Of a stretch of 64,000 nucleotides of DNA, positions 111 to 59,419 are shown in pieces. The stretch's first letter is position 1. Each line of letters starts with the position of its first letter. The DNA lies in assembly GCA_026770705.1 (NCBI GenBank), contig JANJGN010000052.1, positions 3,472,001 through 3,536,000 on the forward strand, written 5' to 3'. Position numbers and translations under genes: made by a program. The notes beneath the pieces are model-generated. The model was not told where the DNA came from, made no database searches, and worked only from the letters and a program-made list of their open reading frames with translations. The stretch is from Isurus oxyrinchus. Taxonomy: Eukaryota.

Positions 111-179
111 GTTGCCGTGGATGAAGATAAAGGAGGAGATTACTGTAATAGGGAGGAAAAATATTCAATAATTTGGACA

Positions 180-7620: not shown

Positions 7621-7663
7621 TCTGTGTGTTTAATTAGAAAGGGTGAATGTGTCACTGTGAGAC

Positions 7664-7677
7664 AAAATGAGGAAGTG
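7664..7677. promoter_or_regulatory. PU.1/Spi-type Ets site AAAATGAGGAAGTG, unit A promoter
   Basis: Matches the A-rich GAGGAAGT consensus; same position relative to exon 1 in units B, D and E. Confidence 0.6.
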
Positions 7678-7899
7678 GGTAACCAGTGAGAAGATCGAGG
7701 ATGTTTTGTGCTCTCAGCAAAACGTTTACCATGTGATGATCTGTCAGCTCATATTTGGGCAGCTGTAGTCATGAAGCTTCTCCATTGGCTCCATGGGATT
7801 AGACTCCTCCCCCTCATCTCAGAGGCTGAAACTCAGGCGATAGAGTTCCCAATACAGGTCTCTGGCCTTATGATACATTTCAACGATCCCTGTTATCAT

Positions 7900-11494: not shown

Positions 11495-11611
11495 TTATAA
11501 ATTCCCATAAACAGAATCCTCAGCAAAATCACAGTTTGCGTAAAGATCATCATCTGTATCAGGATTGACTCCGCGGTAAGATTTCATTTCCAGATCCTTC
11601 TCATCTTTCTT
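11495..11611 (-). CDS. Terminal cytoplasmic exon KKDEKDLEMKSYRGVNPDTDDDLYANCDFAEDSVYGNL*
   Basis: TTTCTATTACAG acceptor, phase 0, 117 nt to TAA; acidic tyrosine motifs; conserved open paralog at 54653-54769. Confidence 0.72.
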   Translation of the reverse strand, partial: KKDEKDLEMKSYRGVNPDTDDDLYANCDFAEDSVYGNL

Positions 11612-11709
11612 CTGTAATAGAAACAGAAATGATCAGAGTGACAATCAGAGTGATCAGTGTTTAGTATTATTGATCCAAATCAAAAATTCCACCCACAATA
11701 GATACATTA

Positions 11710-38529: not shown

Positions 38530-39170
38530 TTGTAGGTGCTGTAGTTTGTACAGAGGCTGTAGAGAGGCTACAAATTAGGAAAATTTGGAGAGGCTGTAGG
38601 AGTTCACAGAGCTAGGGAGAGTTGTAAAGTTTGCAGGAGGTTACAGAGATAGGGAGGGTTGTAGGGGCCGGAGGAATTACAGTGAAAGGGGGGTGGGTGT
38701 AGGGACTGGTGGATGTTACAGGGTAAGGGGGGCATTAGGGGCATGAGTAGGTTACAGAGACAGGGGGTTTGGAGGGACTGGAGAAATTTACAGTGAAAGG
38801 GAGGCTTTAGGGGATAAAGATGGTGACAGAGATAGGGAGGCTGGATGGGAATGGGAAATGTTATGGAGATAGGAGGTTTGTAGGTACAGGATGGGGTTAT
38901 AGAGATTGGGAGGGTTATAGGGACTGGAGGAGGTTACAGAGATAGAGAGTGCTGTAGGGACTGGAGGACGTTACAGAGATAGGGGTTGTTGCAGCGGTTG
39001 GAGAAGATTACAGAGAAATGGACCGTTGTTGGAGCTGGAAGAGGTTTATGAGGTAGGGGTGGTTATAGGGACTGAAATAATTAACAGAGACTAGGAGTGT
39101 TGTAGGGGCTGGAGGAGGTTACAGAGATAGGGAGGGTTGTAGGGGCTGGAGGTGGAAGATGAGATTACAG
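38530..39170. repeat. Degenerate ~37-bp tandem array
   Basis: GGTTGTAGGGGCTGGAGGAGGTTACAGAGATAGGGA variants. Confidence 0.7.
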
Positions 39171-39204
39171 GGATAATGAGGAAACAAAGATGTAAATTTT
39201 GACA

Positions 39205-40190
39205 TTGAGACTTTGCTTGACCAGGAGCCAGTCTCGGTCATCGAGCAGAGCGGGTGATAAGGGAATTGGATTTGGTGTGAGTAAGGACGTGGTCAGCAGT
39301 TTTGGATGGCCTCAAGTTTATGGAGTGTGGAGCGTGTGTTGGAACAGTCGAGTCTGGAGGTAGTGAAGGTGTGGATGAGGGTTTCAGCAGCAGATGAGCT
39401 GAGACAGGGTGATGTCGTGCGATGTTACGGAGGTGGAAATAGACGGTGTTAGTGAGGGTGCAGATATGAGGCCGGAAGCTCATCTCAGGATCAAATGGGA
39501 CAACAAAGCTGGGAACAGATTGGCTTCAATCTCAGAGAGCTGTCAGGGAGAGGAATGGAGTTGGTAGCGAGGGAACAGAGTTTGGATCGGGGAATGAAGA
39601 CAATGGCTTCAGTCTTTCCAATATTTAATTGGAGGGAATTTCTGCCCATCCAGTACTGGATGTCGGATAAGCAGCCTGATAATTTAGCAGCAGTGGAGGA
39701 GTCGAGAGAGGTGGTGGTGAGGTAGAGCTGGGGATCCTCAGTGGACAGGTGAAAACTAACACTGTTCAGATGATGCTGCAAAGCCATTGCAAGTGATTCT
39801 CTGGCTACGATGAGATGGATAAGAATGGAGCCAGGGGAGAGCAGTCCCACCCAGCTGGACGACAGTGGAGAGGTGTTGGAGGAGGATGGTGTGGTCGAGC
39901 GTGTCAAAGGCTGCAGACAGATCGAGAAGGACGAGGAGGGAAAGTTGACCTTTGTCACAGTCACACAGGATGCCATTTGTGACCTTGATAAGAGCTGTTT
40001 CAGCACAGTGGCTGGGGTGGGAACCTGATTGGAGGGATTCAAACATGGAGTTCCGGGAAAGATGGGAAAGGATTTGGGAGATGGAAACACGTTCAAGGAC
40101 TTTGGAGGGGAAACAGAGGCTGGAAATGGGACGGGGGTTTACACAGACGGTGTGAGGGGTGGAAGGTGTAGTGGGGAGGAGACACTTCAC
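39205..40190 (-). mobile_element. L2-type LINE fragment (duplicate of 180-1165)
   Basis: Same ORF fragments, offset ~39.0 kb. Confidence 0.85.
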
Positions 40191-40410
40191 TCAGGGGGGA
40201 GGTGTCATCACCCCTCAGCTCGGTTTACGTTACAGCTATGATGTGGATTCAATCACACACAATAAGCTCATGGATCTGGGAGCAGAAATAGACAAATCAT
40301 TAAAAATAGTGACGCTGGTTAACACGGCCAAACAAAAAGCAAATCAAACACTATTATTTCCCATTGAGTGTTGGATGTGAATTGTTGAGTAATTATAACA
40401 CAGCACTTAC

Positions 40411-40788
40411 CAGAAACGTGAAGCTGGGTTACAGGGGAAACGTTATGGCTCCGACGATTGCCACATTTTATCGTGAAAAAATAATGTCCTGCATCTTCCC
40501 GTCTGATGTTGTTTATAATCAGGGAACAGTCGCCATCTTTCAGGTCTCCAGACAGCCGGGTCCGATGGTCGAACTGTGATAACTCGTGACTGTGACCCTT
40601 GGAGTGAAAGGCTATAGACCATTTAGACCATTTGTTCCGTATGTACCTTCTCATTTTCCAGATTCCGACATGTGGTTTCTTTACCAAATGTGATGGATAA
40701 CTGTAATGACATGGAATCAGTACACACGAACCTTTCTGCGCTGTCACCTCTCGTGGAGTGTCACCTTTCCACTCTTGTGACAATCCAA
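40411..40788 (-). CDS. Unit C first V-set exon, Arg replaced by Thr (YFFTIK)
   Basis: 378 nt, phase 1-1, open; paralog of 1386-1763. Confidence 0.88.
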
Positions 40789-42867
40789 CTGGGGAGAGAA
40801 ATATCAATATTTAACTCTGGATGTTTTGTTGATCCACTGGACTCGATATCCACCCCCTCCATCACTGGGGCACAGTGGCTGCAGTGTGGACCATCTACAG
40901 GACACACAATGAACTCCACAAGGTATCACCCCAGATGGAAGAGAATCCTGGACACAAAAGCGGAAAAGTTCATTCTACATTGGTTCATGGTCCTCAGGAC
41001 CCTGTTTGTGCACAAGCCTGCTCTCCAACAGAACTGAAGTTGGGGACAATGCATTTGGAATTCCACTGTCCAGGGCATTGGGTTAACCTGCTGATTTTGT
41101 TTTAAATCTAACATCTATTTTTGGTCTGTTGCCTTAAAAGGACTGTAACTGGGAGTCAGGTTAATTAGGAATTTTAGGAGTTATGATAGCAGTCTTATAG
41201 TTATGTATGTGCTTGAAATCCTTTATTTTGATGACAAATATGTTAATTTATTGTTTTAAATCTCTGAAGGTATTGGTGGAGTTAGTGCTTCTGAATTAAG
41301 TGCACACATCTCATAATAAATACAAATTGCAAAATCATTATGATAGTGTGACCAGGTTTCTCTCATGGACTTGGTCTGCCTGGCACACATCACCTGCCAA
41401 GTGATAACACTGTTGTAATATGCCTTTCAGGGACAGCAGCATGACATCACTCGAGGGGAAGTGTGTCATGTGATTTTTAGGAACTGGTGTTCGCTTAAGT
41501 AAGTTCGATGTGTATTTGTGTGCGTTAGGCATAAGGTCTATCTTTAAGTTCAAGTTTAGTTTGTATTTCTGTATTTGGGTGTTGAGAAAAGGGGGAACTT
41601 GATGTAAAAAGAAGCCAGCATTCCATTGAGGTTTTATGACTGTTGAAGGGAAGTCAAAACAAATACAAGGTGTAAGAAACTGTGCTGTTGCCTAGCAACA
41701 GTGATCCAGAGGGAAGGACCCACAGAGACAGAGAAAAACAGAAAAGTACTTTCAGTTCTGTTGAAAGGAGTTGCCAGGAGAAGCAGCAAAGGAGCGGGAC
41801 AGATAGTCAGTCCCAAAGTAAAGATGAAGCCAAATCTATCGAGTGGAACAGGAGAAAGGGCCCAAGAAAACCTTCTAGTCAAATCTGTAAAAGGCCCTGT
41901 TAAGTGAAGTTAAGAGTGAGGAGCAGAAGAAGGCTTCAAGCATAAAGGGAGAAAGCAGCAGGACACAGACCTAAAGCAAAATAGGCTTGCGAGAAGCCAG
42001 AAGATCCTAGGAGACACCACAGGTTGGTGACTCATTACTACGGCCATGTGAAGCCATGGTGTTCCATTGACACGGCTGAGCATTGGAGAGACAGGGCGCG
42101 GAAGGAAGGCTGAATGCACGTGGCGATCCAGGGGGCAGGAACATGGGAAGGAGAGTTTGAAATAGTGAAAGTGGACCCTTGTGGAAGGTGTCTGAGTGAA
42201 AGTGTCATGTTGGAGAAGATTCCAAAGTGAGTTCTTGGAGAGTGGAGATTGGAAACTCTCATATGAAAGAAGCTTTTCAGTGAGACTGGTTGGCTCACAG
42301 TGTAACAAGCGTCTGGGGACAGATGAGACATAGAATTTGTTTCAAGTGGGCTCTGCCACTTGCTTTCAGAATGTTGTGTCCCTGACCACAGGTCGTCTAT
42401 TGGTTTACACGGACTGTGTACTTAGTGTGAACATGAGAATATAAGATAGTTATCGTAATTTGTGTTCTACTTATGTATCTGTAAAGGTATAGGTCTGGGT
42501 GAAGGAGTAATGTCATATAGTTTGTCTTTCCTAGTTTAATAAATGTTTTATTCTTTTGTTAGAAGTTCATCAGATGACTCCTGTGACTGTTCAGTAGCCG
42601 CACTCCACATTCCTAAATAAAAAATAAAAGTTAGGACCTGTCAAGCTGAGTTCCACCCTGGGATCTGACTTGCCCAGTAGTAACATCAGCTGGGATGATA
42701 ACACCATCCAGTCCAAGTTTCACTTTGGCCTGTGAGCAGAACACAGTTCACACAGTTTGGCTGCAGGTGTCTCCCAGCTTTCTATCCTTGTATATCTGTT
42801 CTCATGTCCCTGTTCTAAATAACTGAACCCACAATGTATTTACCCAATTCCGTATCAGTGGCTTTAA

Positions 42868-43760
42868 CCTCATCCCAGATCCTGTAGGAGAAGGAAGGTC
42901 AAAGGAATATTGTCAGAATGTCCACAAAATTCCCCAGTTTGAACTGGGATGTAGCTGACCGACTATCTGAATTCAGAATGTTTAAACAGCGTACAGAGCT
43001 CTGGTTTCCTGATTCAGGTGTGACTGAACCAGACGAACAAGCCATAAAAATTCACCTCGCGATTGGGAATGAAGGTCTACACAGGCTGAGCACATCAGGA
43101 TTAACAGCAGAAGAGCGAAAGGATCCCCAATAGATACGGACGATATTGGAAGACAGGTTCAGAATCAGGTGAAACTCCATATTCATCAACTAGAGTTTAT
43201 GTCATTTCATCAGCCTACACAATCCATAGACCACTTCATCAGCCGATGTAGAGAAAAGGGTACGCACTGTGATTTCAAACACAGAGCCTGCAGACAGAGT
43301 TGTTGAGTTGGTGATTACATCCACTCCCATGGAAGCCTTCCAGAAAGATCTGCTAGATAAGACCAAAACCTATAGCATTGAAGAGCTACTCAAGGATGGA
43401 CATAAATACGAAGTGATCCTCGCAGGTCAACGAAGCTTACAGGTCCTCAGTACAACATCAATTGTTGACACACTCACTAGAACATCCAAACCTAGTGAGA
43501 CGTGTGGAAGGTGTGGCCTTCTGCAGGCACCAAGGAAATGCCCAGCTTTCCACCAATCCTGCAAGGCTTGTGGCAGAAAGGGCCATTGACAGCGGCAGGG
43601 CACGAGAGCAAAGGCTGATGCAGCTACAAAGAGCCGTGCGCTGATCCAAAGAGACCCTGCACAACGGGGCACCTTCAAGCAATAAGAATGACCATCCGCT
43701 ATCCCATCAGGAACATATACATGTGGTGACTGACAAACCAGGAAATGGCGATGATGTACA
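42868..43760 (+). mobile_element. Gypsy gag remnant (duplicate of 4432-5325)
   Basis: Same broken gag ORFs. Confidence 0.8.
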
Positions 43761-45535
43761 TGTGGGAGGGTCAGTAATGTGGGAGTGCTGCACTATCAGG
43801 GGGTCAGTAATGGGAGAGTGCTGCACTGTCAGAGGGTCAGTAATGAGGGAGTGCTGCACTGCCAGAGGGTCAGTAATGTGGGATTGCTGCACTGTCAGAG
43901 GGTCAGTAATGAGGGAGTGCTGCACTGTCAGAGGGTCAGTAATGTGGGAGTGCTGCACTGTCAGAGGGTCAGTAATGTGGGAGTGCTGCACGGTCAGAGG
44001 TTCAGTACTGAGGGAGTGCTGCACTGTCAGATGGTCAGTACTGAGGGAGTGCTGCACTGTCGGAGGGTCAGTACTGAGGGAGTGCTGCACTGTCACAGGG
44101 TCAGTAATGAGGGAGTGCTGCACTGTCAGATTGTCTGTACTGAGTGAGTTCCGCACAGTCGGAGGGTCAGTATTGAGGGGGTGCCAGAATGTGGGAGGGT
44201 TAGTGCTGAGGTAGAGCGGAGTGTGAGAAGATATCCTTTCATGGCAAAGTTTAACTGGAATTTATTTAAACACAATTCTTGTACCGTGTGTTATTGCAAA
44301 AGAAAGGATTTGAGGAACTAAGTCTTGTTCCTGTAAGACTAAAATAAATTTTCATCGATTTCAATGATTTAGCATTGAAACCTCCCTCTTTGTGCACCAG
44401 TCTTGACTGAAACAACTCGCACAGCACTGTGGGAGGGTGAGTACTGAGGGAGTGCTGCACTGTGGGAGGGGGAGTACTGAGGGAGTGCTGCACTGTGGGA
44501 GGGGGAGTACTGAGGGAGTGCTGCACTGTGGGTGGGTGTGTACAGAGGGAGGGCTGCACTGTGGGAGGGTGAGAATTGAGGGAGTGCTGCACTGTGGGAA
44601 GGTGAGTACATAGGGAGGGCTGCACTGTGGGAGGGTCAGTACTGAGAGAGTGCTGCACTGTGGGAGGGTGAGTACTGAGGGAGTGCTGCACTGTCAGTGC
44701 GTCTGTACCGAGGGAGTGCTGCACTGTCAGAGGTTCAGTAATGAGGGAGTGCTGCACTGTCAGAGGGTCAGTAATGTGGGAGTGCTGAACTGTCGGCGGG
44801 TCTGTATTGAGTGAGTTCCGCACAGTCAGAGGGTCAGTATTGAGGGGGTGCCAGACTGTGGGAGGGTTAGTACTGAGGTAGAGCCGAGTGTGAGAAGATA
44901 TCCTTTCATGGCAAAGTTTAACTGGAATTTATTTAAACAGAATTCTTGTACTGTGTGTTATTGCAAAAGAAAGGATTTGAGGAACTAAGTCTTGTTCCCG
45001 TAAGCCTAAAAATAATTTTCACCGATTCAATGATTTAGCATTGAAACCTCCCTCTTTGGGCACCAGTCTTGATTGAATCAACTCGAACAGCACCGTGGGA
45101 GGGTGAGTACTGAGGGAGTGCTGCACTGTGGGAGGGTGAGTACTGAGAGAGGGCTGCGCTGTGGGAGGGTGAGTACTGAGGGAGTGCTGCACTGTCAGAG
45201 AGTCTGTACTGAGGGAGTGCTGCACTGTCAGAAGGTGTGTACCGTGGGAGTGCTGAACTGTCGGAATGTTAGTAGTGAGGGAGGGATACAGTGTCAGAGG
45301 ATCAGTACTGAGGGAGTGCTGCACTGTGGGTGGATGAGTACTGAGGGAGTGCTGCACTGTCAGATTGTCAGCCATGAGGGTGTGCTGCACTGTCAGAAGG
45401 TCAGTGCTGACAGGGTGCTGCACTTGAAAAGGGTCAATAATGAGGTAGTGCAGCACTGTCAGAGGGACAGTAATGAGGGAGCGCTGCACTGACCGAGGGT
45501 CAGGATTGAGGAAACGCTGCACTGTCAGTTCTGTG
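43761..45535. repeat. 33-bp minisatellite with ~280-bp spacers (duplicate of 7960-9665)
   Basis: Spacer copies at ~44140-44425 and ~44805-45090. Confidence 0.85.
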
Positions 45536-46239
45536 CGTGGTCTGCAATGTCCTAAGTGCATTCTAGGTACAGCCCAAGATTCCGCCTGATGTCTGTGTAA
45601 CAACAACATCATGTACATGTCGAGAATAATTCTCACTGTGTTGGTGCAGCAAGACAGTTTTGGAATGGCACCACCACTGGCAGGAGTGTGCAGCTACAAT
45701 GTGACATGTTTACATTGGAAATTTCCATTATAAAGATGGCCACAGGAATTCATCTGACTGGAAAAAGTGACAACATGAAATAATGTCTTTGAGCCAAGAA
45801 TCTGGCAGGAAAATAAGAATTTTCATCCATAAGTATCTACAGAAAAGGCTGAGCATTTTAATCACTTGTGTTAATCAATGTAATTTTATTCATAACCCAA
45901 ATGCTTCTTACAATCTATCGCAGCATGAAAAAGGTGCAGCATTCAGAAAGCACATTCCAATCAGAGAACAGAGTTTAGCAATGTCACATTTCTGTTCATT
46001 CCTATTCGACCATGTTGGCTGCACACAGCCAGACAATGCCGTGGTTATGATGTGTCCACACAGCAGGACTGGGGAGCACCAGGTATAAGGAAAAGTTTCA
46101 GCTTGCTGAGGAGAAGAAGGAGAATCTCTCGTTCCAGGTTTCTCTCCGTACATTAAGAAGCAGACATGCCGATGTTTCATTGCACTCTGTCTGCTGATGG
46201 GAGTCCGCTTGGAAATTGCTGTTTGTGCTGATGGAAAGA

Positions 46240-46850
46240 ATAAGCTTTTCATAAATCGAGGGATTGAGTACAAACACAGGGAGGTTATGCTGAACATTTA
46301 TAAAGCTCTGGTTAGGTCACAGCTAGAGTATTGTGTCCAGTTCTGGTCTCCTCACTTTGGGAAGGAAGTGAGGGTCCTTGAGAGGGTGGGGAGGAGATTG
46401 AGCAGAATGGGTCCAGGGATGAGGGATTTTAGCTACAAGGTTGGGTTGGAGAAGCTGGGGTTGTTCTCCTTGGAGCAAAGGAGATTGAGGGGGGATCTGA
46501 TCGAGGTGTACAAGATGATGATGGGTTTAGATACGGTAGACAAAGAGAAGCTGTTGCCATTAGCTGATGGTACAAGGACTGGGGGACACAGATTGAAGGT
46601 TGTGGGCAGAGGGGGGATGTGAGGAGGAACTTTTTTACACAGCGAGTGGTAATGAGCTGGAACTCGCTGCCTACGAGGATGGTGGAAGCGGAGACGATGA
46701 ACGATTTCAAAAGGAAATTGGATGGACACTTGGAAATAAACTTGCAGAGATACGGGGATAGAGAGGGGGAATGGGACTGACTGTATTGCTCTACAGAGAG
46801 ACAGCATGGACTTAATGGGCTGAATGGTCTCCTACTGTGCTGGAATGCCT
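46240..46850 (+). mobile_element. CR1 LINE 3' end
   Basis: IYKALVRSQLEYCVQFWSP...LGLFSLEQRRLRGDLIEVYK. Confidence 0.88.
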
Positions 46851-46963
46851 CTCTGATACGAAGGTGATTCTAACCAGGACACTGACCAGTTTCTTTACAA
46901 CTTAACCCAACATCACACGTTATTTGTCCGCACTGACTGACCAGATTGTTGCTGTACAAAGCT

Positions 46964-47103
46964 TCAAACAGTCTGTCGACTTCCTTTCACTGTTTGTCTC
47001 TCCCAGACACAGACTCCAGCGATAGTGATAACCACAGCCACAAGGAATAGCACAGCTCGTATTCCCAGGATCAGGATCACGTGCAGAATCTCTCCTCCAC
47101 TGT
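46964..47103 (-). CDS. Unit D activating-type TM plus short tail exon: SGGEILHVILILGIRAVLFLVAVVITIAGVCVWERQTVKGSRQTV*
   Basis: TTCTGTGCGTTCTCTAG acceptor, phase 1 like the upstream Ig exons; open to TGA; Arg (47057-47059) inside the hydrophobic span; no Tyr in the tail. Confidence 0.78.
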
Positions 47104-48775
47104 CTAGAGAACGCACAGAAAGAAATCTTCACTGACTCTCCGCTTTCAATCTCTCACTCTGGCTGAACAATCAAGCTTCATATCACTGCAACATTTGCTG
47201 TAATATTGACCCATCCACTGGGATTCAATGTGGAATGAATGTTTTCATTGTAAACACTCTAAGAGTGGACAATCGGAACTTTCCCCTTAGCATGGAACAT
47301 TGGTGAGAATGGATCATTGTGCTGTTGGACTCCCTGTCCAATGTTTCTCTCCATCGCTGTGTACAGGATTGTGCTGTAGAAAATTCTGGAAACGTTTAGT
47401 GCAGGGTGGAAATCCATCTTGGATGCGTGTGCGAATCGGGCAGAATCGAGATGGACTCCCCCACGGACTTACACCCCCCGCTTAATAAACAGTTCCAATC
47501 TTTACCCAGAGAGAGGGGAGAATGTGGAACTCACTCCCACAGGGAGTGGTTGAGGTGAACAGTATCGATGTATTTAAGGGGCAGGAGGGTCGGTAACCAG
47601 AGGGACACAGATTGATGAACCGGAGGGGGAGATGAGGAGAATTTGTTTTGACAGAGCGAGTTGTTGTGATCTGGAAGGTGCTGCCTGAAAGGGCGGTGGA
47701 AGCAGATTCAATAGGAACTTTCAAAAGGGAAATTGGATAAACACTTGAAGGAGGAAGATGGGGGCAAAGTGGAGTGGTGCTTAGTGGATCTGATTGGATA
47801 GAACATTGAAAGACCTGGCACAGGCACAATGGGCTGAATGGCCTCCTCCTGTGCTGTATCATTCTCCGCTTCCATGATCTCTCCCCCAGTCAGTAACCAC
47901 TCCAGATCCCTCTTGAAGGCGACAGAGAAACAGGAACTACCACACCCACTGACAGCACATTCTCAAGGATCCCTACTCTCTGGGAAAAGATGAACTCCCC
48001 AACATCCAGCCTATTCCTGCTTCCCAGAGAGTGTAAACCCTTCAGGGAGGCACTGAGGAAGTTTTCAATAAAATGAATTATCAAATCTATCATTTGAGAA
48101 ATAATTTAATTCTGATGAACTCACAGCTTGTGTAGCAAACTGGGAAGTGGAGTTGCTTGAAAAGCTGGGAAACACAAGGATTAAGTGCTACAATGCCACC
48201 ACTGGTGGGAGACTGTAACTACAGCGTGACGTTTACATAGGCAGTCATCATTATCAACAGGGGCATTGGACATACTGGGAAATATGTGCACTGGAAAGGT
48301 GAGTAAATGATGTAAGATTTTCACCAGCAGGAATTCTCTAACTAAACCTCTCCACCTCTCTCTTACTCTCAGATACACAAAGAAAATCACACAGAATCAG
48401 ATAAGGAGGAGTTGGGGCCGGTGATTGTTCGAAGGGTTAGCTTTCAGGAAGCTTCTTAAAAGGAGAGAGAGAGTTGGAGAGGCAGAGAGTATCTGTGAGT
48501 GTCTCTATGCATCTGAGTGTCTGTAATAGACTTTGTAATTTCCATATTCTTCCATAAATATGATTGGGAACACAAATCCCAGATTCCAGGCCAACTCTCC
48601 AGTGCAGTACTCAGGTAAGCCACAGGGGAGTGTGTGCTAGTGTGTTTGTTCGTGAGTGTGTCTTTGTAATTGCTCATACATGTGTGTCTGCATGTGTCTA
48701 TTTAGTTCTGTATATTTGTGTGTGTTTGTGCAATGTTTGAATCTAAGAGAGATGTTGATGTCTGTGTACACTCAC

Positions 48776-48928
48776 TTTCCACAGTGATGGTTATGAACCC
48801 CTCCACTGCTCCATGTTCATTCTCTGCCACACACTGATAGTCTCCAGTGTCCCGATATGTAATGGGAGGAATCACCAACCACAGCTCATTGTTGGAACTT
48901 GTTCTGTTCATTTGGACATTAAGATGTC
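48776..48928 (-). pseudogene. Unit D truncated Ig (I-set) exon, 3' half only
   Basis: MNRTSSNNELWL...DYQCVAENEHG...TVE with donor intact; 5' half and acceptor replaced by ~180 bp of unrelated sequence. Confidence 0.8.
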
Positions 48929-49251
48929 AGGGCAGGAATCAAGAAGCCCGTTCGCAGGATTACCAACAGAAAGTGAACCACAATTTATACTTAATGGGAA
49001 GAGAGTGCTGATTGGTTGGCAAGTGGTCTCTGATAGGTGGACGTGTTGCCATGGAGAATGGTGTGTGCGAGATGTAAACTTTAGACAGCTTGTCTCTTTA
49101 TTCAGCAATAATCAAATAAAGATCAATTAACTTCAATCGACTGTGAAGCACTTAGAGAGGTCTGAGAATGTGGATACTGAGAACGGGCTGCACTGTCAGA
49201 GGGTCAGCGCTGAGGGAGTGCTGATGTAGAATGAAAGGTGTATGTACTTAC

Positions 49252-49548
49252 CTTGCACAGTTAGTACGAGGGTCCGCTCCGATGAAACAGATGGATATCT
49301 CACTCTGCAGCTGAGAGTGTGTCCGTGGTGTTTGAGTGATGGGATCAGGGTCAGAACAGAAGTATAGGTCAGAGTGACACCATGCTGAGTTACAGTGTAT
49401 GAGACTGATCCAGGTACGTCAGTGGGAGTGTCCCAGGTTAAGACAGGCGCTGCAGTTCCATTGCACGTTGTGTTGATGGTGCAGCTTACATCCGCATGCT
49501 TTCCTGCAATAATTTCAGCAGGGAATATCATGGGTTTATCTGTGAAAT
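49252..49548 (-). CDS. Unit D C2-set exon, open
   Basis: 297 nt, phase 1-1, canonical sites. Confidence 0.85.
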
Positions 49549-50406
49549 CTAACAGACAGAGAATGGGTCTTTTTAGAGAAATATAACGTGAAGCATCAGT
49601 TCAAATAGAAATCACAGTCCCACAAGAGAAAGCACTTTTACAAGGATGATATCAGAACTGAGAGGTTACAATGATCAGGAAAGATTTTCTTGCTCTTTGG
49701 CAGTAGTGTTTCTGTCTCTCAGCTTAATACACGTTCACTCCGAGACATGTGAATTGAGAACACTGGATGAGAGAAGAGGCTCAGACCAGAGATTGGAGTT
49801 AAAAGCAGAATACTGCGGATGCTGGAAATCTGAAACAAAAACAAAAATTGCTGGAAAGACTCAGCAGGTCTGACAGTATCAGTGGAGAGGAAGACAGGGT
49901 TAACGTTTTGAGTCCGTATGACTCTTCATCAGACCAGAGGTTTGAGTTCACTGGCTTCTCATTTCCTCAGTGATCTGGGTGAGTTATCACCTTGTGGTTT
50001 GTTGGATCTTGCTGTGCACAAACTGACTGCTGTGTTTTACATCTGTGACTACAATTCAGGAATAATTTCATTGGCTGTGAAGGGATTTGGATCCTCCTGA
50101 GGTGGTAAATTGCGCTGCAGAAATGCACATCTTTCTTTTATCGATACGTCAGACTTTTAAACAGGACAGGAGAGATTGATGGGAGTGGTAACCTGATAAT
50201 ACAGTTAATGCTTTTCATCATTGATATTAAAGTGAGTATTAGAGGTTGCTTTAGGACTGAACTGGAAGCTATCACCAGGTTATTGAGAATCAGACAGTGT
50301 GTTATAATAAGCTGCGTTTTGTGTTAATATGTAAACGTCACATTTTGTGTTATCTCCCATTGAGTGTTGAATGTGAATTGTTGAGTAATTATAACACAGC
50401 ACTTAC

Positions 50407-50781
50407 CACAAACGTGAAGCTGGGTTACAGGATAATAGTTGTATCTATTCCAGCTGTCAAATTCTATTCTGAAAAAATAAGGTCCTGCATCTTCCCGTCT
50501 GATGTTGTTTATAATCAGGGAACAGTCGCCATCTTTCAGGTCTCCAGACAGCCTGGTCCGATGGTGGAATCTTTGATCCCTGTGACTGTGACCCTCGGAA
50601 TGAAAGGCTATAGACCATTTCGGCTGTGGGTTCCCATCTATTCCTTTCAAGCAGATTCAGACACGTGATCTCCCTACGAAATTTGATAAGTAACTGTAAT
50701 GACATGGAATCTGTACACACGAACCATCCTGCGCTGTCACCTCTCGTGAAGTGTCGCCTTTTCAATCTTGTGACAGTCCAA
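50407..50781 (-). pseudogene. Unit D V-set exon with two nonsense codons, Arg retained
   Basis: TGA at 50762-50764 (W) and 50657-50659 (G); C-strand Trp changed to Cys; YFFRIE present. Confidence 0.85.
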
Positions 50782-51484
50782 CTATGGAGAGAAATGTCAA
50801 TATTTAACTCTGGATAGTTTGTAGATCCACTAGACTCGATATCCACCCTCTCCATCAGTGGGGCACAGTGGCTGCAGTGTGGACCATCTACAGGACACAC
50901 AAAGAACCCCCCAAGGTATCACAACGGAGGGAAGAGAATCCTGGACACAGGAGTGGACAAGTTCATTCTACATTGGCTCATGGTCCTCAGGACCCTGTTT
51001 AGTGAAGCCAGTCTTCCACCCAACACAGTGTCTACAAGACACACAGGGAAACTGTGTAAACATCTCATCTCTCTACACTGACTGGTTTGAGCTTCAGTTT
51101 AACTTTCAGTATTTTTAAATTTCCATATTGTGGTTGCTATGGTGAAACTGTGCAGGAAGTGCGAGGGCTGGACTCTCTGTCTATTCTGACTGCAGCTGTG
51201 ATGTGGTCGTGGTGATTCTCAGTAAAATGAAACCCTCTGAGCTCCTCCATCCTCGAGGTTTAGGGAGTGAATTCCAGAGCTCAGGCCCCAGGCAGCTGAA
51301 GGCCCGGCCGCCACTATTGGAGTGATGGGAATCGGGGGATGGTCAAGAGGCCGGAATTGGAGTAACACAGAGATCTGGGAAGTTGTTTGGGTGAGTTGCA
51401 GGAGGTTACAGAGATAAAGAGATAAGAATGATCTTTTACAAAGACTGTTAAACATAAATCTGTCCGAGCTGATGATGATATTAC

Positions 51485-51520
51485 CTTGGAGAAGTGACAG
51501 GAGTAAGATTTCCTGACCAT
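51485..51520 (-). pseudogene. Unit D leader exon with 4-nt deletion
   Basis: 36 nt versus 40 nt in B and E, giving a frameshift at the splice. Confidence 0.8.
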
Positions 51521-51970
51521 CGTCCACTCCCAGATATTCCATCCACTTCTCACTCTCAAGCTGTGAAAGAGAAAGGAGTTAATGAGACCTCACCTCTTGT
51601 CCGACAGCTCTCGAGAGATCAGAACTGCTTTTAGACAATGTCTTCACTGACTAATTTGATTCTCTGTGGGATGATAGGTGCTCTGCAGAGAGTTACAAGT
51701 CTTTAAGTAAGACAAACAATGATTGATTTGCATTTCTATAGCACCTTTCACTATCTCAGGGCATCCCAAATCTCATGTCTCTGCAGTTCTCTCATCCCTT
51801 GAGCTAGAAAGATGTTCTGTACAACAGACTTGAGCCTCACACCCTGATCTCAATAATCAGTAGAAATCTTTCAAAGGCATCAATCATTGGAATCTGTCCT
51901 TATAAAGTCACAACATCAACAAAGGACAGTGTTGGTGGTGGAAGTGAATTCCAATCGTTCCGTTACTTAC

Positions 51971-52111
51971 CCAGGACCTGTCCGACTGCTCGCCTGGGGA
52001 GGAACTGCCCACACGCTCTGCTTGGGCTGAATGACCTCTTCCTGTGCTGCTCCCTATTTGTGTTTAATTAAAAAGGGTGCATGTGTCACTGTGAGTCAAA
52101 ATGAGGAAGTG
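51971..52111 (-). promoter_or_regulatory. Unit D non-coding exon 1 and composite AP-1/PU.1 site
   Basis: TGAGTCA at 52092-52098 abutting AAAATGAGGAAGTG at 52098-52111. Confidence 0.62.
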
Positions 52112-52214
52112 CTTGGTACCAAGTGAGAAAGCAACTCTTTGCCTCGCACTGTTAGAAAACTGTTAACCCTTTGCGTGCCAATAATGTGGTTGACGGGCCA
52201 TCGACTGTTCATAT

Positions 52215-53320
52215 GCAACAAGCTCGAGGGTTTGAATGGGCCTCCTCCTGTTCCTGTGTGACAGGCTCGAGGGGTCTAAATGGGCCTCCTCCTGTTCCTG
52301 TGTAACAGGCTCAAGAGGCTGAATGGATCTCCTTGTTTTCCTGTGTTACAGGTTAGATGGTCTGAATGGGCCGCCTCCTGTTCCTGTGTAACAGGTTCAA
52401 GAGGACAGAATGGGCCTCCTCCTGTTCCTGTGTAACAGCATCATGGGGCTGAATGGGCCTCCACCTGTTCCTATCTAACAGGCTTGAGTGGCTGAATGTG
52501 CCTCCTCCTGTTCCTGTGTAACAGGCTTGATGGGGCTAAATGGAGCCCCTAATGTTCCTGTGTAACAAGCTTGTGGAGGCTGAATGGGTCTCCTGTACCT
52601 GTGTAACAGGCTCAAGGGGACAGAATGGGCCTCCTCCTTTTCCTGTGTAACAGGCTCGAGGGAACAGAATGGGCCTCCTCCTTTTCCTGTGTAACAGGCA
52701 CGAGGGACTGAATGGGTTTCCTATTCCTGTGTAAGTGGGATGAGAGACTGAATGTCCTCTTCCTTTTCCTGGGTAACAGGCTCGAGGAGCTGAGACTCTC
52801 TCCTGTTCCTGTGGAAGGGTGTTGAGGGACTGAATGTCCTTTTCCTGTTCCTGTATAATAGGCTCAAGAGGCTGATGGGCTTTCTCCTGTCCTCATGTAA
52901 CAGGCTTGAGTGGCTGAATGGTCCTCCTCCTGTTCCTGTGTAACAGGCTTGAGGGAATGAATGGGCCTCCTCCTATTCCTGTGTAACAAGTTCGAGGGGG
53001 CTGAATGGGCCTCCTCCTGTTCCTGTGTAACAGGCTCGAGGGAATGAATGGGCCTCCTTCTGTTCCTGTGTAACAGGTTCGAGGGGGCTGAATGGCCTCC
53101 TGCTGTTCCTGTGTAACAGGATCAAGAGGCTGAATGGGCCTCTTCCTGTTCCTGTGTAACAGGCTCGAGGGGGCTGAATGGGCCTCCTCCTGTTCCTGTG
53201 TAACAGGCTCGAGGGGCTGAATGTGCCTCCTCCTGTTCCTGTGTAACAGGCTTGAGGGGGCTGAATGGCCTCCTGCTGTTCCTGTGTAACAGGATCAAGA
53301 GGCTGAATGTCCTCCTGTCA
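52215..53320. repeat. ~43-bp minisatellite built from the CR1 LINE 3' tail (GTAACAGGCTCGAGGGGCTGAATGGGCCTCCTCCTGTTCCTGT), ~25 copies
   Basis: Unit matches LINE tails at 33715-33760 and 37610-37650. Confidence 0.85.
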
Positions 53321-54652
53321 TTAAAAATAAATACTGCAGATGCTGTAAATCTGAAATAAAAACAGAAAATGCTGCATTAACTCAGCAGGTCTGGTAGCAG
53401 CTGTGGAGAGAGAAACAGACTTCTTGCTTATAGACTCTGAACAAGGGTCATAAGGACACAAAATGCTAATTCTGTTTATCTCTGCACAGATGCTGCCAGA
53501 CCAACTCAGTTTCTCCAGCATTTTCTGTTTTTGTATCAGGTGCCCTCTTGTTCTTGTGTAGCAGGTTCGAGGGGGCTGAATGGCCTCCTCCTGTTCCTAT
53601 TCAATGGGCAGTCAAAGAATGTCTGATTTTGGACCTCGAACCCAATTCTGTCCTCAGGACATTGACAGAAGGAGAGACCAGTTACAGGTTAATGCCGGAG
53701 GATTATTTATTTTCCCAATCTTTTATCCAAGTATCTCATCAAACACAGAGCAGAACCAGGATCAAGGATGTTGGTCTCTGTGATCTGTAACACATCGCAC
53801 AGTCCACCCATCCACTCAGCCTTCAGGATGGATGCTCATTGTACTCTCCAAGTGTGAAAGACTAAAATTGAGGTTTATTGCAGCTATATCTCATTCTGTT
53901 GTCAAAGCTGTCTCATCCATCCATGACATATTGAAGAAGGTAAACCTGCAACCAATTTTTCACATCATAATTTCCTATGTTCATTGGCAACATCAATGTA
54001 AACATGTCACGCTGAAATGATGTCCTCCCACCAGTGGTGGCACTGTATCACATCTGTTATCCTCTGAGCTGCAGAGAATTTCTCAAATCTCCAATCAAAT
54101 TGTTTCCCTGTTTCCGGGATTGCTGATGGTTTTGCTCTTTAACGATGAAGTGTAAAATCCAAATATATATCTGAAAATACATTTGACTACAAAATGCTGA
54201 GTAAATTTTACCAATCTCCTCTGCTCCAATTATCCACCGATCCTGCATTCCCTGAAGTCTACACTGGCTGATGAATATTCTGTAAACACTGACAGACAGG
54301 AAGGTGAATAACAGAATGAAAATTAACTCATAATCACGGACACGGGATTGAATTTGTCCATTCTGTCCTGGTACATCATCGAACGATATCTAAAGACATT
54401 TACAATCAGAATGGAGAGAAGGATGTTTCCAACAGTGAGGGACAAATCTGAAGGAGGATGTTCAAATTGAAACCCACAGACAATCATCCTTGATAGATCA
54501 TTCCGAAGAAATTCCATCAGATTGTAACAAGAGGTTTAAATCTATTTCCTGGGAGTGAGTTCCTGTGGATATTAGGAAGGTAAATTGGAGTTTTGAATGA
54601 TTCTCCCGTTCTGTATTCTCCCCACACTGTGTGTGTCTCATTCTTGCTCAGT

Positions 54653-54769
54653 TTATAAATTCCCATAAACAGAATTCTTGGCAAAATCACAGTTTGCGTA
54701 AAGATCATCATCTGTATCAGGATTGACTCCGCGGTTAGATTTCATTTCCAGATCCTTCTCATCTTTCTT
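54653..54769 (-). pseudogene. Orphan terminal cytoplasmic exon ...DDDLYANCDFAKNSVYGNL*
   Basis: Open 117-nt paralog of 11495-11611 with acceptor intact; no upstream exons, Gypsy remnant begins at ~54879. Confidence 0.68.
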
Positions 54770-54878
54770 CTGTAATAGAAACAGAAATGATCAGAGTGAC
54801 AATCAGAGTGATCAGTGTTTAGTATTATTGATCCTAATCGAAAATTCCACCCACAATACATACATTAAATATTGATAC

Positions 54879-57800
54879 TGTTGGATGCTGCTCACGAGTT
54901 TGTTGGGACTTATGGATCCAGGCTTGTTTTGGAGAGGCTGAGTAGGTACAATAGACAGAGTAGATCAGCAGACAGTTCTTAGATGAAACACATTCTGCTT
55001 ATTTACAAAGGAACTCAGCAGCTACACTTGTGTGCTTTCAACTCAAGCCCTGTCTCCGCATTACAGACTCTAACCAAAGGTGACCGACTACTGAGGTACC
55101 TGCGCCACTCGGCTGTTGGACACTGATATAAGAGTTAAACAGGGACTTCTATTAGTGAAAACCCAAGGTCAGCAGAATTCTCCAGGTGAACCTTGTGCAC
55201 CATGGGGCTGACATCAGCAGAACTCTCCAGAAAGGCCTTGAAGATCACGAGGGATTAACTCGAGAAGAGACATAAAGAGATGCTGAGGGTAAAGAGATAA
55301 GGTAAAGGCAAACAGCACCAGGCTAGAACGAGATAAACAGTTCTTGCTTGGGTAAGGAGCAGATATGTACCTGGGACTGGGAACATCTGCTTATTATGTG
55401 ATTATGTACTGACAAGATTTGAATTTAAATAACCCAATGTGTACGTGACTAACTCTGTGAACAAAAAAGATGGTTTCCCTGTAATGGGTAGAGTTCTGTT
55501 TTTAGCCAGGCCTGAGGTTGATTCTGAGAACACACCACAACACTGAGCTCATGTTATCTTCCATTGTAACCTTCTTCTTAAAGGTACATCACACATCAGA
55601 TTACCACCACCCTCCCCCTTTACTCAGAAATACATTTTACACTTACTTTTACCATTTTCTCAAAGTATCAGATGATTTACACAGATCAGTAATTTACAAA
55701 TTCAGTCTTTCTGGGGGGTTTCCTTATGCGTCTGGAACGTCTCAGATCCACAGCTTCAGATGCTTTGTCAGGAGTCTCCTTTTCTGATGTTGTCCCAACA
55801 CCAGCTTCTTCGGTGGACACCTGCAAACCTGTTTCCTCAACTCTTGCAGGTACAACGGACCCTTCAGACACATCTGTTCTCAGCTGAGTTCTTTCAACAG
55901 GAGACATAGACGCAGCCGTGAAGACTGGTGGGGTTGTTTCTTGGTACTTTGTTTCTCTCCTCCTTATATGACCCACATGTCTCCATATGACTCGGTCTTC
56001 CACTTTCACATGGTGAGAAAGAGTTCCAATCGCTGCATTTATTTCACCCGGTGACCACATTGGCCCCTCTCTAAAATCCTTCACATATACCGTCTCTCCT
56101 ACGGTCAGCTTCCTGTCATGACTATGCCAGTCATGTCCAGTTTCCTGTCTTCCTGGACTCCTTTCCACCTTCCCGCTGACATTTAGCATGACTGATGTTG
56201 CAAATGTGACGTGAGAAAAAACTTTTTCACACAACTAAGTTCTGGGCCTGGAATGCACGGCCTGGAAGTGTTGTGGAGGCAGGTTCAATCGAGGCATTCA
56301 GGAGGGCATTAGATGGTTATTTGGATAGAGAAAAGGTGCAGGGGCATGGGGAAAGGCAGGGCAATGACACTAGGTCATGATGCTCATTTGGAGAGCTGGG
56401 ACAGACACGATGGGCTGAATGGCCTCCTGCTGTGCCATTAAGACACTGTGATCCTGCAGAGGAGACTCTGAAAGGCAAACCGATTTATTGATACAACCCT
56501 TTGTGTGTATTAATTGTGACAAACTTCTGGGAGGCCTTCTCGAACTCCAATTGTTGATAAGCATGGCTCATATCAGCTCCGTGTAAGCCGTTCCAGTCAA
56601 TTCTTGTCATCTCCACAAACACTTTGGCCAGGCTCAGGTACAGGGACTATTGGTGCTGCCCATTCTGAGGACAGCACAGATTGTATCCCTCCCAGTTTCT
56701 AGAACCTGCCCAATTCAGCATCTGCCTTTTCCCACATTGCATAAGGTACTGGCCGTGCCTTCATAAATCAGAGGGGTAGAGTCTGGATCCACATGAATTT
56801 TTGCTTGCAGCCCCTGGATCTCCCCGAGTTCATCTTGGAAAACTGAGATGTATTTTTGTAGTAGCTCAGGTAGCCCACTGGCTCTCAGTTGGAAGATCTC
56901 AGACCAATCCAGTTTAATATCTTTCAGCCAGTTTCGTCCAAGGAGGCTTGGTCCCTCACCAGCTCCCATCATCAAGGGTCATTTTACTGATTGACTTCCA
57001 TACTGTATAACAACCCTGCTTATGTCTTTGGCTTGAATGTCTTCTCCCGTGTGAGTTTTCAATTAGTCATCTGTTTCTTCCAAATTTAATTGACTTTCCC
57101 CATGATTCCAGTATTTGAAAGTATGCTCCCCAATTAGCGTAATGTTAGCTCCTGTGTCCACCCCCATTCTGAGAGCTCTATCATTCACCCTCACTGTTAC
57201 ATAGATTGGCTCTGTTCTTCCTACCTTTAAATTATACAATGAATAACTATCTGAATCTGTTACTTCAGGCTCTTCTATGTTATGGATCTCACAGGGTTTT
57301 CTCTCTTGGTTGAAACTCTGCCTGATTCTATCCTTGCAATCTCTCATGGGCTCTCTGTTTCGATGACAGTAAAAACAATTGATTTTTTTAAAGTTCCATT
57401 CACTACGAGGTTGTCTGCTTCACCTCTGTTCACATTATTCCATGTTTTCTCTGCTAAGTCATTCCTTTTTATTTGCTGCTAGTGGTGGAGGTTTCCCGTT
57501 TCTCATCAGAGCTGTACATTTTCCCGCACTTCTTGGCTGAGGCTCCTCACCCAACATGAGGACGGTGACATTTTGCACTATCCATATGTTTTTCGAGTCC
57601 CTCACTGCTCTTTCCATAGCCAGCACTATTCCCAGCACCTTCTGAATATCCAAATCTGTTTCAGACAGTAATCTCTTCTGAATCGCATCTTCATTTATAC
57701 TGCACACCAGTTGATCTCTCAGCATATTATTTATAGATTTACCAAACTCACAATGTCCTATTAACTCTTTCAGACTTTCCACATAACATGCAGCTGCCTC

Positions 57801-58260
57801 CCCTGGGACTCTATTTCTTGAGTTAAATTTGGACCGTTGCATCGTTACCGAGGGCTGGGGCTGGGAAGGAATCTTCACAAGGTTCACTATATCATCTAAA
57901 CTTTTTGAATCCATGGCACCGGGTGACATTAAAGTTCGCATCAATCCCTAAATCTTACTCCCACACGTGGATAAGAGGGTCGCTCGCCTCTTCTCCTCCC
58001 CATCAATGTCATTCACTTGGAAAAAGAACGCGAGGAGTTCACCATAATGAGACCAATCGCCCACCGTTGGGTCGAAAGGATCAACTCTTCCAAACTGCAG
58101 CATTCTTCGAGGGGACTGCTTCGGTTATTAGGATGGAAATTATATTTATAATCGTTGCGTGAGGCACAGCCGGATTTCGGTTCCCTTGCTCTCATTCCTT
58201 GCTTTTTCTTCCTTGTTATTCACCTCATCGCCAGTTTATTCAACCCTTGTCACTACTTTA
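54879..58260 (-). mobile_element. Second-family Gypsy remnant: PBS, gag, protease, RT start, integrase C-terminus, PPT, 3' LTR
   Basis: PBS-like TGGCGATGAGG at 58223-58233; HCEFG...MLRDQLVC; VDTGA; GPSLLGRNWL; VGETVYVKDF...WRHVGHIRRR; purine tract at ~55610-55625. Confidence 0.85.
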
Positions 58261-58929: not shown

Positions 58930-59379
58930 GTAAGTAATGGAACGATTGGAATTCACTTCCACGACCAACACAGTCCTTTGTTGATGTTGTGACTTTATAA
59001 AGACAAATTCCAATGATTGATGCCTTTGAAAGATTTCTACTGATTATTGAGATCTGGGTGTGAGGCTCAAGTCTGTTGTACAGAACATCTTTCTAGCTCA
59101 AGGGATGAGGGAAGAGCAGAGACATGAGCTTTGGGACATCCTGAGGTGCTGAAATACGATATAGAAATGCAAGTCCTTCATTGATTTATTTTTTTAAAGC
59201 TTTTTAACTCTCTGCAGAGCACCTATCATCCCACAGAGAACCAAATTAGTCTGTGTAGACAATGTGTAAAAGCAGTTCTGATCTCTCGAGAGCTGTCGGA
59301 CAAGAGGTGAGGTCTCATTAACTCCTTTCTCTTTCACAGTTTGAGAGTCAGAAGCTAAAGGAATATCTGGGAGTGGACA

Positions 59380-59419
59380 ATGATCGGGAAATCCTACTTC
59401 CTCCTGTCACTTCTCCAAG
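59380..59419 (+). CDS. Unit E leader exon, intact (MIGKSYFLLSLLQ)
   Basis: TTTCACAG acceptor (exon starts 59340), ACAATG start, CAAG|GTAATA donor; V exon predicted beyond the right edge. Confidence 0.82.

What the first reader, a model, noticed from the sequence alone, without database searches (positions are those of the whole stretch)
46964..47103. Unannotated activating-type TM exon with intramembrane Arg
Seen: clean acceptor, correct phase, ILHVILILGI-R-AVLFLVAVVITIAGVCVW then a short Tyr-free tail; unrelated to the TM exons of units B and C and too short for the ORF track. Known: TM Arg/Lys pairs with the Asp of FcRgamma, DAP12 or DAP10 (Siglec-14, -15, -16, LILRA, PIR-A). This is the key evidence for an activating member.
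Basis: partly seen in the sequence, partly recalled or inferred. Interest (0 to 1): 0.8.

Follow-up and report, generated by a model that had tools for sequence, protein, structure and literature searches.

The report
Shark activating-type membrane exon, decayed gene
This is a genuine copy of a shark immune-receptor exon that encodes a membrane anchor with a buried arginine and almost no tail, the usual build of a receptor that signals through a partner chain, but the front half of the gene it belongs to is broken here.

Summary
On the minus strand, 47103-46964 is a 140-nt phase-1 exon behind an AG acceptor. It encodes a 29-residue hydrophobic span with one Arg and a 12-residue Tyr-free tail. 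It is not chance: 9 shark proteins match it (best E 1.2e-13), and ILGIRA is invariant in all 10 aligned rows. RefSeq models in 8 shark species already carry it (15 of 64 proteins fetched, 14 at the C-terminus), on Siglec-like, multi-Ig CD22-like and SLAM-like ectodomains. Contigs of 4 of 4 runs (2 samples) join the C2 donor 49252 to 47103 across a GT..AG intron, but that joint cannot be assigned to this copy.

New here is the state of this unit. Its leader has a 4-nt deletion. Its only V exon has two in-frame TGA stops and lacks the conserved Trp. A third Ig exon is a half fragment. Only the C2 and membrane exons are intact. The exon type is therefore right, but "an activating member" is doubtful for this copy.

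The partner chain cannot be read from sequence. The scan has reported the same exon type several times elsewhere in this genome. It is an ordinary new member of a known kind.

The parts
46964..47103 (-). Last coding exon, 140 nt including the TGA stop at 46966-46964. It encodes a short stalk, a membrane span with Arg and a 12-residue tail.
   Evidence: homologs
47003..47089 (-). 29-residue hydrophobic span ILHVILILGIRAVLFLVAVVITIAGVCVW. The Arg codon is at 47059-47057, 11th residue, in the outer half.
47104..49251 (-). Intron, GT at 49251-49250 and AG at 47105-47104. It is removed in contigs of 4 of 4 runs.
   Evidence: table 5 (joint 47103|49252, skips 2148, ends CT..AC on the + strand)
49252..49548 (-). 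C2-set Ig exon, 297 nt, phase 1-1, intact, both Cys present.
   Evidence: (PF08205, E 5.2e-8)
48776..48928 (-). 3' half of a further Ig exon with its donor. The 5' half, which holds the first Cys, is missing, and stops lie upstream. This is a pseudo-exon.
   Evidence: intact paralogs at about 17700-17483 and 16340-16107
50407..50781 (-). V-set exon with two in-frame TGA stops (50764-50762 and 50659-50657) and the conserved Trp changed to Cys. Its splice sites are present.
51485..51542 (-). Leader exon copy. A 4-nt deletion breaks the canonical leader frame that starts at ATG 51520. An upstream ATG at 51542 then reads MEYLGVDDGQEILLLSLLQ in phase 1.
   Evidence: canonical leader MIGKSYFLLSLLQ in the proteins
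46228..46941 (-). Candidate 3'UTR intron (GT at 46941-46940, AG at 46229-46228). It would be followed by a 3'UTR exon starting at 46227, with AATAAA at 45890.
   Evidence: table 7 (X2 loose end at 46942, one contig, 33 letters)

Best explanation
The stretch is a true copy of a membrane-anchor exon that sharks reuse on several Ig-type receptors (the ILGIRA cassette). In an intact gene it is spliced in phase 1 to the last Ig exon. It then supplies a membrane helix with one Arg in its outer half and a 4-12 residue tail that has no signalling motif. By analogy, such a receptor reaches the surface and signals only when the Arg is neutralised by the paired Asp of a disulphide-linked adaptor dimer that carries an ITAM. 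That makes it the activating counterpart of the neighbouring Siglec-like genes, which have uncharged anchors and long tails. In this copy only the C2 and membrane exons are intact. The leader is frameshifted, the only V exon has two stops, and a further Ig exon is a half fragment. Most likely, then, the unit is a decaying duplicate that makes no sialic-acid-binding receptor. Shown: the exon, its homology, the invariant Arg, the splice joint in RNA-derived contigs at family level, and the lesions. Inferred: the adaptor pairing, which adaptor it is, and the loss of function.
For: Exon anatomy.

Homology: one search gave 10 hits at E <= 0.001. Nine of them are shark receptor models, and in 8 of those the match lies at the C-terminus. 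The splice context matches: XP_072325011.1 reads ...LILIVQ-D-SGGENLDVILILGIRAV...SRQTV. ILGIRA is invariant in 10 of 10 aligned rows. LGIRA occurs in 15 of the 64 proteins fetched. In 14 of those 15 it is followed by a 4-12 residue tail without Tyr. The closest matches are two Carcharodon carcharias models, 93.5% identical over 46 residues.

Splicing: the joint 47103|49252 with GT..AG appears in 4 of 4 runs, one contig each, with the shorter side 23-31 letters.

Transcription of this copy or a twin: contigs match V50-specific sequence with 0 differences in 127 letters and 4 in 196 (table 8). The other V exons in the window are only 74-91% alike there.

Lesions: two TGA stops and Trp to Cys; a 4-nt deletion in the leader relative to three paralogous copies; a half Ig exon.

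Neighbours: uncharged membrane exons. C. carcharias models with the same anchor as the exon at 32791 carry long Tyr-bearing tails (P0022, P0025, P0057).
Against: The joint cannot be assigned to this copy. The contigs count from 95% likeness. The last 60 nt of this C2 exon are identical to the C2 exon at 35385-35444. The scan's notes report further copies of the membrane exon elsewhere in this genome. The V-to-C2 joint contigs carry TCTG, not this V exon's TGTG, so they come from paralogs.

Intron-bearing contigs over 47051-47694 differ from the window by 1-4% and share the same differences in all four runs. They may therefore come from a twin copy or another haplotype.

The stops and the deletion rest on a single assembly. 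I could not see whether any contig reads them differently, because 90 rows table 3 were not shown.

Skipping the V exon keeps the frame, and the upstream ATG restores a phase-1 leader, so a protein without a V domain is possible. Automatic annotation predicts such V-less forms in C. carcharias (P0057, P0058).

No adaptor was examined.
Confidence: 0.6

Rival explanations
1. The unit is a working activating gene. On this reading the two stops and the leader deletion are assembly errors or belong to one haplotype, or the V exon is skipped and the upstream ATG supplies a usable signal. The product would be either a normal V-C2-anchor receptor or a V-less C2-anchor protein.
For: The C2 and membrane exons are intact, and all splice sites are present. 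The C2-to-anchor joint is abundant in 4 of 4 runs. V50-specific contigs are present in X2 and X3. The leader read from ATG 51542 ends in phase 1 with ...LLLSLLQ. V-less models exist in C. carcharias (P0057, P0058).
Against: There are four independent lesions in one unit. The rescued leader has an acidic start and a hydrophobic core of only 7-8 residues. A V-less product cannot be a lectin. No joint seen uses this V exon's own donor.
Confidence: 0.22
2. The C2 and anchor exons serve as an alternative early ending of a longer transcription unit. That unit would start at the leader at 51542 and could also run on to the V exons at 40807 and 36794, which have no leader block of their own nearby. 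One promoter would then yield both an adaptor-coupled and a tail-bearing form.
For: No copy of the leader block lies between 40807 and 46333. The stretch that holds it in the lower duplicate (about 5326-7895) has no counterpart in the upper one. All exons are phase 1-1, so any combination stays in frame.
Against: No read evidence exists, because only 46500-50900 was laid. The leader itself is damaged. The anchor exon carries a stop and appears to splice to its own 3'UTR exon.
Confidence: 0.08
3. The stretch is a chance open frame in an intron, or the debris of a V exon read out of frame.
For: The out-of-frame translation weakly resembles the start of the V exons (tblastn E 0.02-0.16).
Against: At DNA level the similarity is no better than shuffles: 177-392 of 500 shuffles reach the observed score. 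The in-frame peptide matches shark receptor C-termini at E 1.2e-13. The exon is spliced in RNA-derived contigs.
Confidence: 0.01

Closest known systems
Shark RefSeq models that end in the ILGIRA anchor. Examples: XP_072325011.1 'myeloid cell surface antigen CD33-like' (Scyliorhinus torazame), and Carcharodon carcharias 'sialic acid-binding Ig-like lectin 12' (P0012, P0013) and 'CD33-like' (P0016).
   Same: The exon is the same, the phase-1 junction after the C2 exon is the same (...TVQ-D-SGGE...), the Arg is invariant, and the ending ...KGSRQTV is the same. Identity is 82-93% over 45-46 residues.
   Different: Those models have open V domains. Here the leader and the V exon are broken. They are automatic predictions, and none has been studied.
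Mammalian activating Siglecs (Siglec-14, -15, -16) and other paired activating receptors (LILRA, PIR-A, activating KIR).
   Same: An Ig-type ectodomain, a single basic residue in the membrane span, a very short tail, and inhibitory relatives with similar ectodomains next door. The names and their partners are recalled. The general rule was read in passages of PMC13107469.
   Different: There is no sequence relationship between the anchor exons, so the build probably arose independently. The partner chain in sharks is unknown. According to the review passages, receptors that use DAP12 have a central Lys. Here an Arg lies in the outer half, which the review associates with zeta/gamma-type partners.
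Fish Siglecs described in print (Siglec-1, CD22, MAG, Siglec-15; PMC7226832, abstract seen in a search listing).
   Same: A Siglec-type V-set domain followed by C2-set domains.
   Different: That paper's abstract lists four Siglecs as regularly present in fish. The expanded CD33-like clusters of sharks with this anchor appeared in none of the searches I ran.

Membership tests
Shark ILGIRA anchor cassette (C-terminal exon of Siglec-like, CD22-like and SLAM-like models) | Sequence homology that includes the ILGIRA motif | tested here: met
   (best E 1.2e-13). In one search the motif is invariant in 10 of 10 rows.
Shark ILGIRA anchor cassette (C-terminal exon of Siglec-like, CD22-like and SLAM-like models) | Phase-1 acceptor directly after an Ig exon, and a stop 4-12 codons after the membrane span | tested here: met
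   In one search, 14 of 15 relatives have tails of 4-12 residues without Tyr; here the tail is 12.
Shark ILGIRA anchor cassette (C-terminal exon of Siglec-like, CD22-like and SLAM-like models) | Spliced to the upstream Ig exon in RNA | tested here: inconclusive
   One search shows the joint 47103|49252 in 4 of 4 runs. The contigs could come from a near-identical copy elsewhere (and the scan's notes).
Adaptor-coupled (activating) immunoreceptor | One basic residue inside the membrane span, and a short tail without signalling motifs | tested here: met
Adaptor-coupled (activating) immunoreceptor | Physical and functional dependence on an adaptor with a membrane Asp (zeta, FcRgamma, DAP12 or DAP10) | not testable with these tools
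   This needs co-expression and co-precipitation. No adaptor sequence could be brought in without typing it from memory. Passages of PMC4016189 report that the gamma chain was not found in cartilaginous fish (2014 genomes).
Adaptor-coupled (activating) immunoreceptor | Inhibitory or tail-bearing relatives with similar ectodomains in the same cluster | tested here: met
   Uncharged anchors lie at 32791-32729 and 14934-14724. C. carcharias models with the 32791-type anchor have long Tyr-bearing tails (P0022, P0025, P0057).
Siglec (CD33-related type) | Open N-terminal V-set domain of the Siglec/CD22 type | tested here: not met
   This unit's V exon has two TGA stops and Trp to Cys. Its open 108-residue part scores below the PF24518 cut-off (21.7 against 27). 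Paralogous V exons in the window pass (40.1 and 29.9).
Siglec (CD33-related type) | The Arg that binds sialic acid (its role is recalled) | tested here: met
   The codon is present in ...YFFRIEF of this V exon. Two paralogs (V exons at 40807 and 1782) have Thr there.
Siglec (CD33-related type) | C2-set domain after the V domain | tested here: met
   PF08205, E 5.2e-8.
Siglec (CD33-related type) | Binding of sialylated glycans | not testable with these tools
   This needs a binding assay.

The most novel reading that the evidence does not exclude
The ILGIRA exon is an old, mobile adaptor-docking module of elasmobranchs. Exon shuffling has placed it on at least three unrelated ectodomain types: Siglec-like V-C2, multi-Ig CD22-like without a lectin domain, and SLAM-like. 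Its Arg in the outer half of the membrane docks a zeta/gamma-type chain in a lineage where the FcR gamma chain was reported as absent. If so, it points to an undescribed or ancestral adaptor system, and the cluster keeps spare copies of the module, such as this one, that gene conversion or exon capture can reuse.
Probability: 0.3. Interest if true: 0.55.

Novelty: new member of a known kind. Interest (0 to 1): 0.3.

Why it matters
Paired activating and inhibitory receptors are a recurring design of vertebrate innate immunity. Their presence in a Siglec-like cluster of a shark dates that design, for this family, to before or within the cartilaginous fishes. This particular copy adds little, for three reasons: the exon type is already in public gene models, the scan has reported it several times in this genome, and the gene around it is broken. 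The useful points are practical ones. First, an intact anchor exon is not proof of a working activating gene in these clusters. Second, read evidence at 95% likeness cannot separate the copies. Third, the partner chain of this widely reused shark anchor is still unknown and could be tested directly.

Tried and rejected
1. Chance frame or V-exon debris. The out-of-frame peptide resembled the start of the V exons (tblastn E 0.02-0.16). DNA-level local alignment was no better than shuffles: 177-392 of 500 shuffles reached the observed score. Rejected.

2. Paralogs of the exon inside the window. There are none. Only a short interspersed repeat downstream of the exon matched elsewhere.

I compared proteins instead.

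4. Adaptors. Paper searches for shark DAP12, FcRgamma or TYROBP gave nothing on sharks. A search of the scan's notes gave only receptors with built-in ITAMs.

5. Literature on shark Siglecs. 'Siglec + shark + DAP12' (23 papers, 15 listed), 'Siglec + elasmobranch' (6 papers, 5 listed) and a six-term Siglec evolution search listed no paper on this cluster or anchor. The whale shark genome paper (PMC8455134) mentions Siglecs once, in a list.

The anchor exon was searched on its own, and natural proteins returned by the tools were used for wider searches. The joined step was left out.

7. P0008, the tenth hit, is a repetitive 678-residue protein that matches in 10 short stretches and has no LGIRA. 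I left it out of the homolog count.

Full report
WHAT IS THERE. The finding lies on the minus strand. After a pyrimidine-rich stretch and an AG at 47105-47104, an exon starts at 47103. Read in phase 1 it gives SGGEILHVILILGIRAVLFLVAVVITIAGVCVWERQTVKGSRQTV, then TGA at 46966-46964. That is 140 nt with no internal stop. The hydrophobic span is 29 residues (47089-47003). Its only charged residue is Arg (CGA, 47059-47057), the 11th residue, in the outer half. The tail has 12 residues and no Tyr. In a six-frame hydropathy scan of the window this was the strongest segment outside simple repeats: 2.92, the highest of 4 minus-strand segments at 2.2 or more.

THE UNIT AROUND IT. Upstream on the same strand lie Siglec-type exons.
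- A V-set exon at 50781-50407.
- A C2-set exon at 49548-49252.
- The 3' half of a further Ig exon at 48928-48776.
The C2 exon ends ...CTGTGCAAG|GTAAGT, so its last G plus the AC of the membrane exon gives Asp...LVLTVQ-D-SGGE.... The window holds four more V exons (40807, 36794, 20326, 1782) and two more C2 exons (35661, 18891), all on the minus strand. It also holds two uncharged membrane exons (32791-32729 and 14934-14724) that resemble each other at 75% but not this one.

IS IT MORE THAN CHANCE? I searched the 45-residue exon alone against 1.84 billion representative proteins.
- Ten proteins scored E <= 0.001, the best at 1.2e-13 with 82% identity. One of the ten (P0008) is a repetitive protein and I set it aside.
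- The other nine are shark gene models from Scyliorhinus torazame, Chiloscyllium punctatum, C. plagiosum, Hemiscyllium ocellatum, Rhincodon typus and Mustelus asterias.
- In eight of the nine the match is the C-terminus. In the ninth (P0010) the model reads on into another unit.
- XP_072325011.1 reads ...LILIVQDSGGENLDVILILGIRAVIFTVIVVITVAGICVWERQRVKGSRQTV. That is the same junction residue and the same ending as here.
- ILGIRA is invariant in all 10 aligned rows.

A word-index search with that natural protein gave 55 proteins at E <= 1e-10 among 143 candidates. I fetched all of them.
- Over all 64 proteins held, 15 carry LGIRA. They come from 8 shark species.
- In 14 of the 15 the motif is followed by a tail of 4-12 residues without Tyr.
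- No ray or skate protein in the set has the motif. One stingray model (P0038) has a different Arg-bearing anchor with an 8-residue tail.
- The closest matches to the window's exon are two Carcharodon carcharias models, 93.5% identical over 46 residues.
- The window's other exons are 90-96% identical to C. carcharias models. The genome is therefore that species or a near relative, but no model is identical to this locus.

ONE ANCHOR, SEVERAL ECTODOMAINS. Pfam scans show that the carriers differ.
- Siglec V plus C2: P0016 and P0003.
- A single Siglec-type V: P0006.
- Four Ig_2/Ig_3 domains without the Siglec V: P0005, named CD22-like.
- An Ig_3-type domain: P0007 and P0009, the latter named SLAM family member 9-like.

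READS. One search for runs listed no run on record as RNA; the kinds are guesses. I laid 46500-50900 on X1, X2 and X3 (one sample) and X5 (another study). All are contigs counted from 95% likeness.
- A joint from 47103 to 49252 skips 2148 letters with ends CT..AC, which is GT..AG on the minus strand. It appears in 4 of 4 runs, one contig each. The shorter side is 28, 23, 31 and 28 letters. This is exactly the predicted C2-to-anchor splice. Together with the V-to-C2 and V-to-V joints in the same runs, it shows that the runs hold spliced RNA.
- The joint cannot be assigned to this copy. The last 60 nt of this C2 exon are identical to the C2 exon at 35385-35444. Other C2-donor contigs continue into exons that this unit lacks (loose ends at 49252 and 49253, table 7). 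The V-to-C2 contigs carry TCTG where this V exon has TGTG. The scan's notes report further 140-letter copies of the anchor exon elsewhere in the genome.
- In favour of transcription of this copy or a near twin, X2 has a 127-letter contig with no difference and X3 a 196-letter contig with 4 differences over 50524-50650/50719. The other V exons of the window are only 74-91% alike there.
- Contigs also cover the intron next to the anchor exon at 96-99% likeness, with the same differences in all four runs (47113, 47128, 47292 and others). They could come from another haplotype or a twin copy.
- A single X2 contig ends at 46942 and continues with letters that equal 46227-46198. GT lies at 46941-46940 and AG at 46229-46228. 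This suggests a 3'UTR intron, with AATAAA at 45890.

THE STATE OF THIS COPY.
- The V exon has two in-frame TGA codons, at 50764-50762 and 50659-50657. All four paralogs have TGG and GGA at those places. The conserved Trp after the second stop is Cys.
- The leader is damaged. Three paralogous copies (23968-23804, 7166-7002 and the inverted 59300-59464) encode MIGKSYFLLSLLQ in phase 1. That is the signal peptide of many shark models. This unit's copy (51542-51485) lacks 4 nt, so the frame from the canonical ATG (51520) is lost. An upstream ATG (51542), out of frame in the other copies, now reads MEYLGVDDGQEILLLSLLQ and ends in phase 1. That peptide has an acidic start and a short hydrophobic core.
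- The further Ig exon is only a half.
- Only the C2 and anchor exons are whole.
- The whole unit (46334-53619) sits in one copy of a segmental duplication and is absent from the other. Positions 1-10460 match 39026-46333, and 10465-11722 match 53620-54880 at 95%.
- Skipping the V exon would keep the frame and give a small V-less protein. Such V-less forms are predicted in C. carcharias (P0057, P0058).
My reading is that the unit is a decaying duplicate. This rests on one assembly.

HOW IT WOULD WORK. This part is inferred. In a passage of the review PMC13107469 (passages read), receptors with a basic residue in the membrane span assemble with disulphide-linked adaptor dimers through their paired Asp. 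An Arg near the top of the span is associated there with zeta/gamma chains, and a central Lys with DAP12. The Arg here lies in the outer half, which favours a zeta/gamma-type partner. Mammalian activating Siglecs use DAP12 (recalled). Passages of PMC4016189 report that the gamma chain was not found in cartilaginous fish in 2014-era genomes. No adaptor was examined here, so the partner is open.

WHAT IS KNOWN. The build is the classical activating member of a paired receptor family. The exon itself is already in public automatic annotation of 8 shark species. The scan's own notes report the same exon type at least four times elsewhere in this genome (s1-300793, s1-871670, s1-868675, s1-868660). 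I found no paper on it in the searches. For PMC7226832 I saw only the start of the abstract, which lists four Siglecs as regular in fish.

VERDICT. The exon is a real member of a known kind, sitting in a broken gene copy. Interest is low to moderate.

Noticed in passing
window 23968-23804 (-), 7166-7002 (-), 59300-59464 (+), 51542-51485 (-): Four copies of the leader block. The copies at 23968 and 59300 (the latter inverted) encode an intact MIGKSYFLLSLLQ with a GT donor. The copy at 7166 has the donor changed to AT. The copy at 51542 has the 4-nt deletion. The inverted copy probably serves a plus-strand gene that runs past the window's end.
   Followed up: partly
window 7108-7046; proteins P0022 and P0025: Two C. 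carcharias models start with MKYLGVDNDREILLPPVTSPR. This is an upstream open frame that overlaps the canonical leader ATG in another frame, so the annotated start is probably wrong.
   Followed up: partly
window 1-11722 against 39026-46333 and 53620-54880: A large segmental duplication (88-96% identity). The 7.3-kb unit 46334-53619 (leader, V, C2, half Ig exon, anchor exon, 43-bp tandem array) is present only in the upper copy. The lower copy is contiguous across the breakpoint (10460/10465).
   Followed up: partly
window 46941-46228: A candidate 3'UTR intron behind the stop codon, seen in one X2 contig. The stop lies 22 nt before the donor. The downstream exon lies in sequence shared with the lower duplicate at about 10354.
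   Followed up: partly
window 50782 and 50410 (table 5c, X5): A contig joins a V-exon donor (TCTG type) to a V-exon acceptor. This is V-to-V splicing in RNA from some copy of the family, and it fits the multi-V genes noted by the scan.
   Followed up: no
proteins P0036 (Pristis pectinata) and P0038 (Hypanus sabinus): A sawfish Siglec-like model has a tail with YQEL, seven residues, then YSDI, which is ITAM-like spacing. A stingray model has a different Arg-bearing anchor (…SLAVRGVLFLL…) with an 8-residue tail.
   Followed up: no
window 11710-13195: A 24-bp tandem array of 62 copies. It overlaps the stretch where another first-stage note proposes a cytoplasmic tail with YxN motifs. That claim should be checked against the repeat.
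   Followed up: no
window 40807-40355 and 1782-1330: These two V exons have Thr where the others have the Arg of ...FFRIE... (FFTIK). They are 88% identical to each other in protein.
   Followed up: no
window 55686-57944 (-): Open frames that look, by eye, like the gag, protease and integrase parts of a retroelement. They were not scanned against any family library.
   Followed up: no
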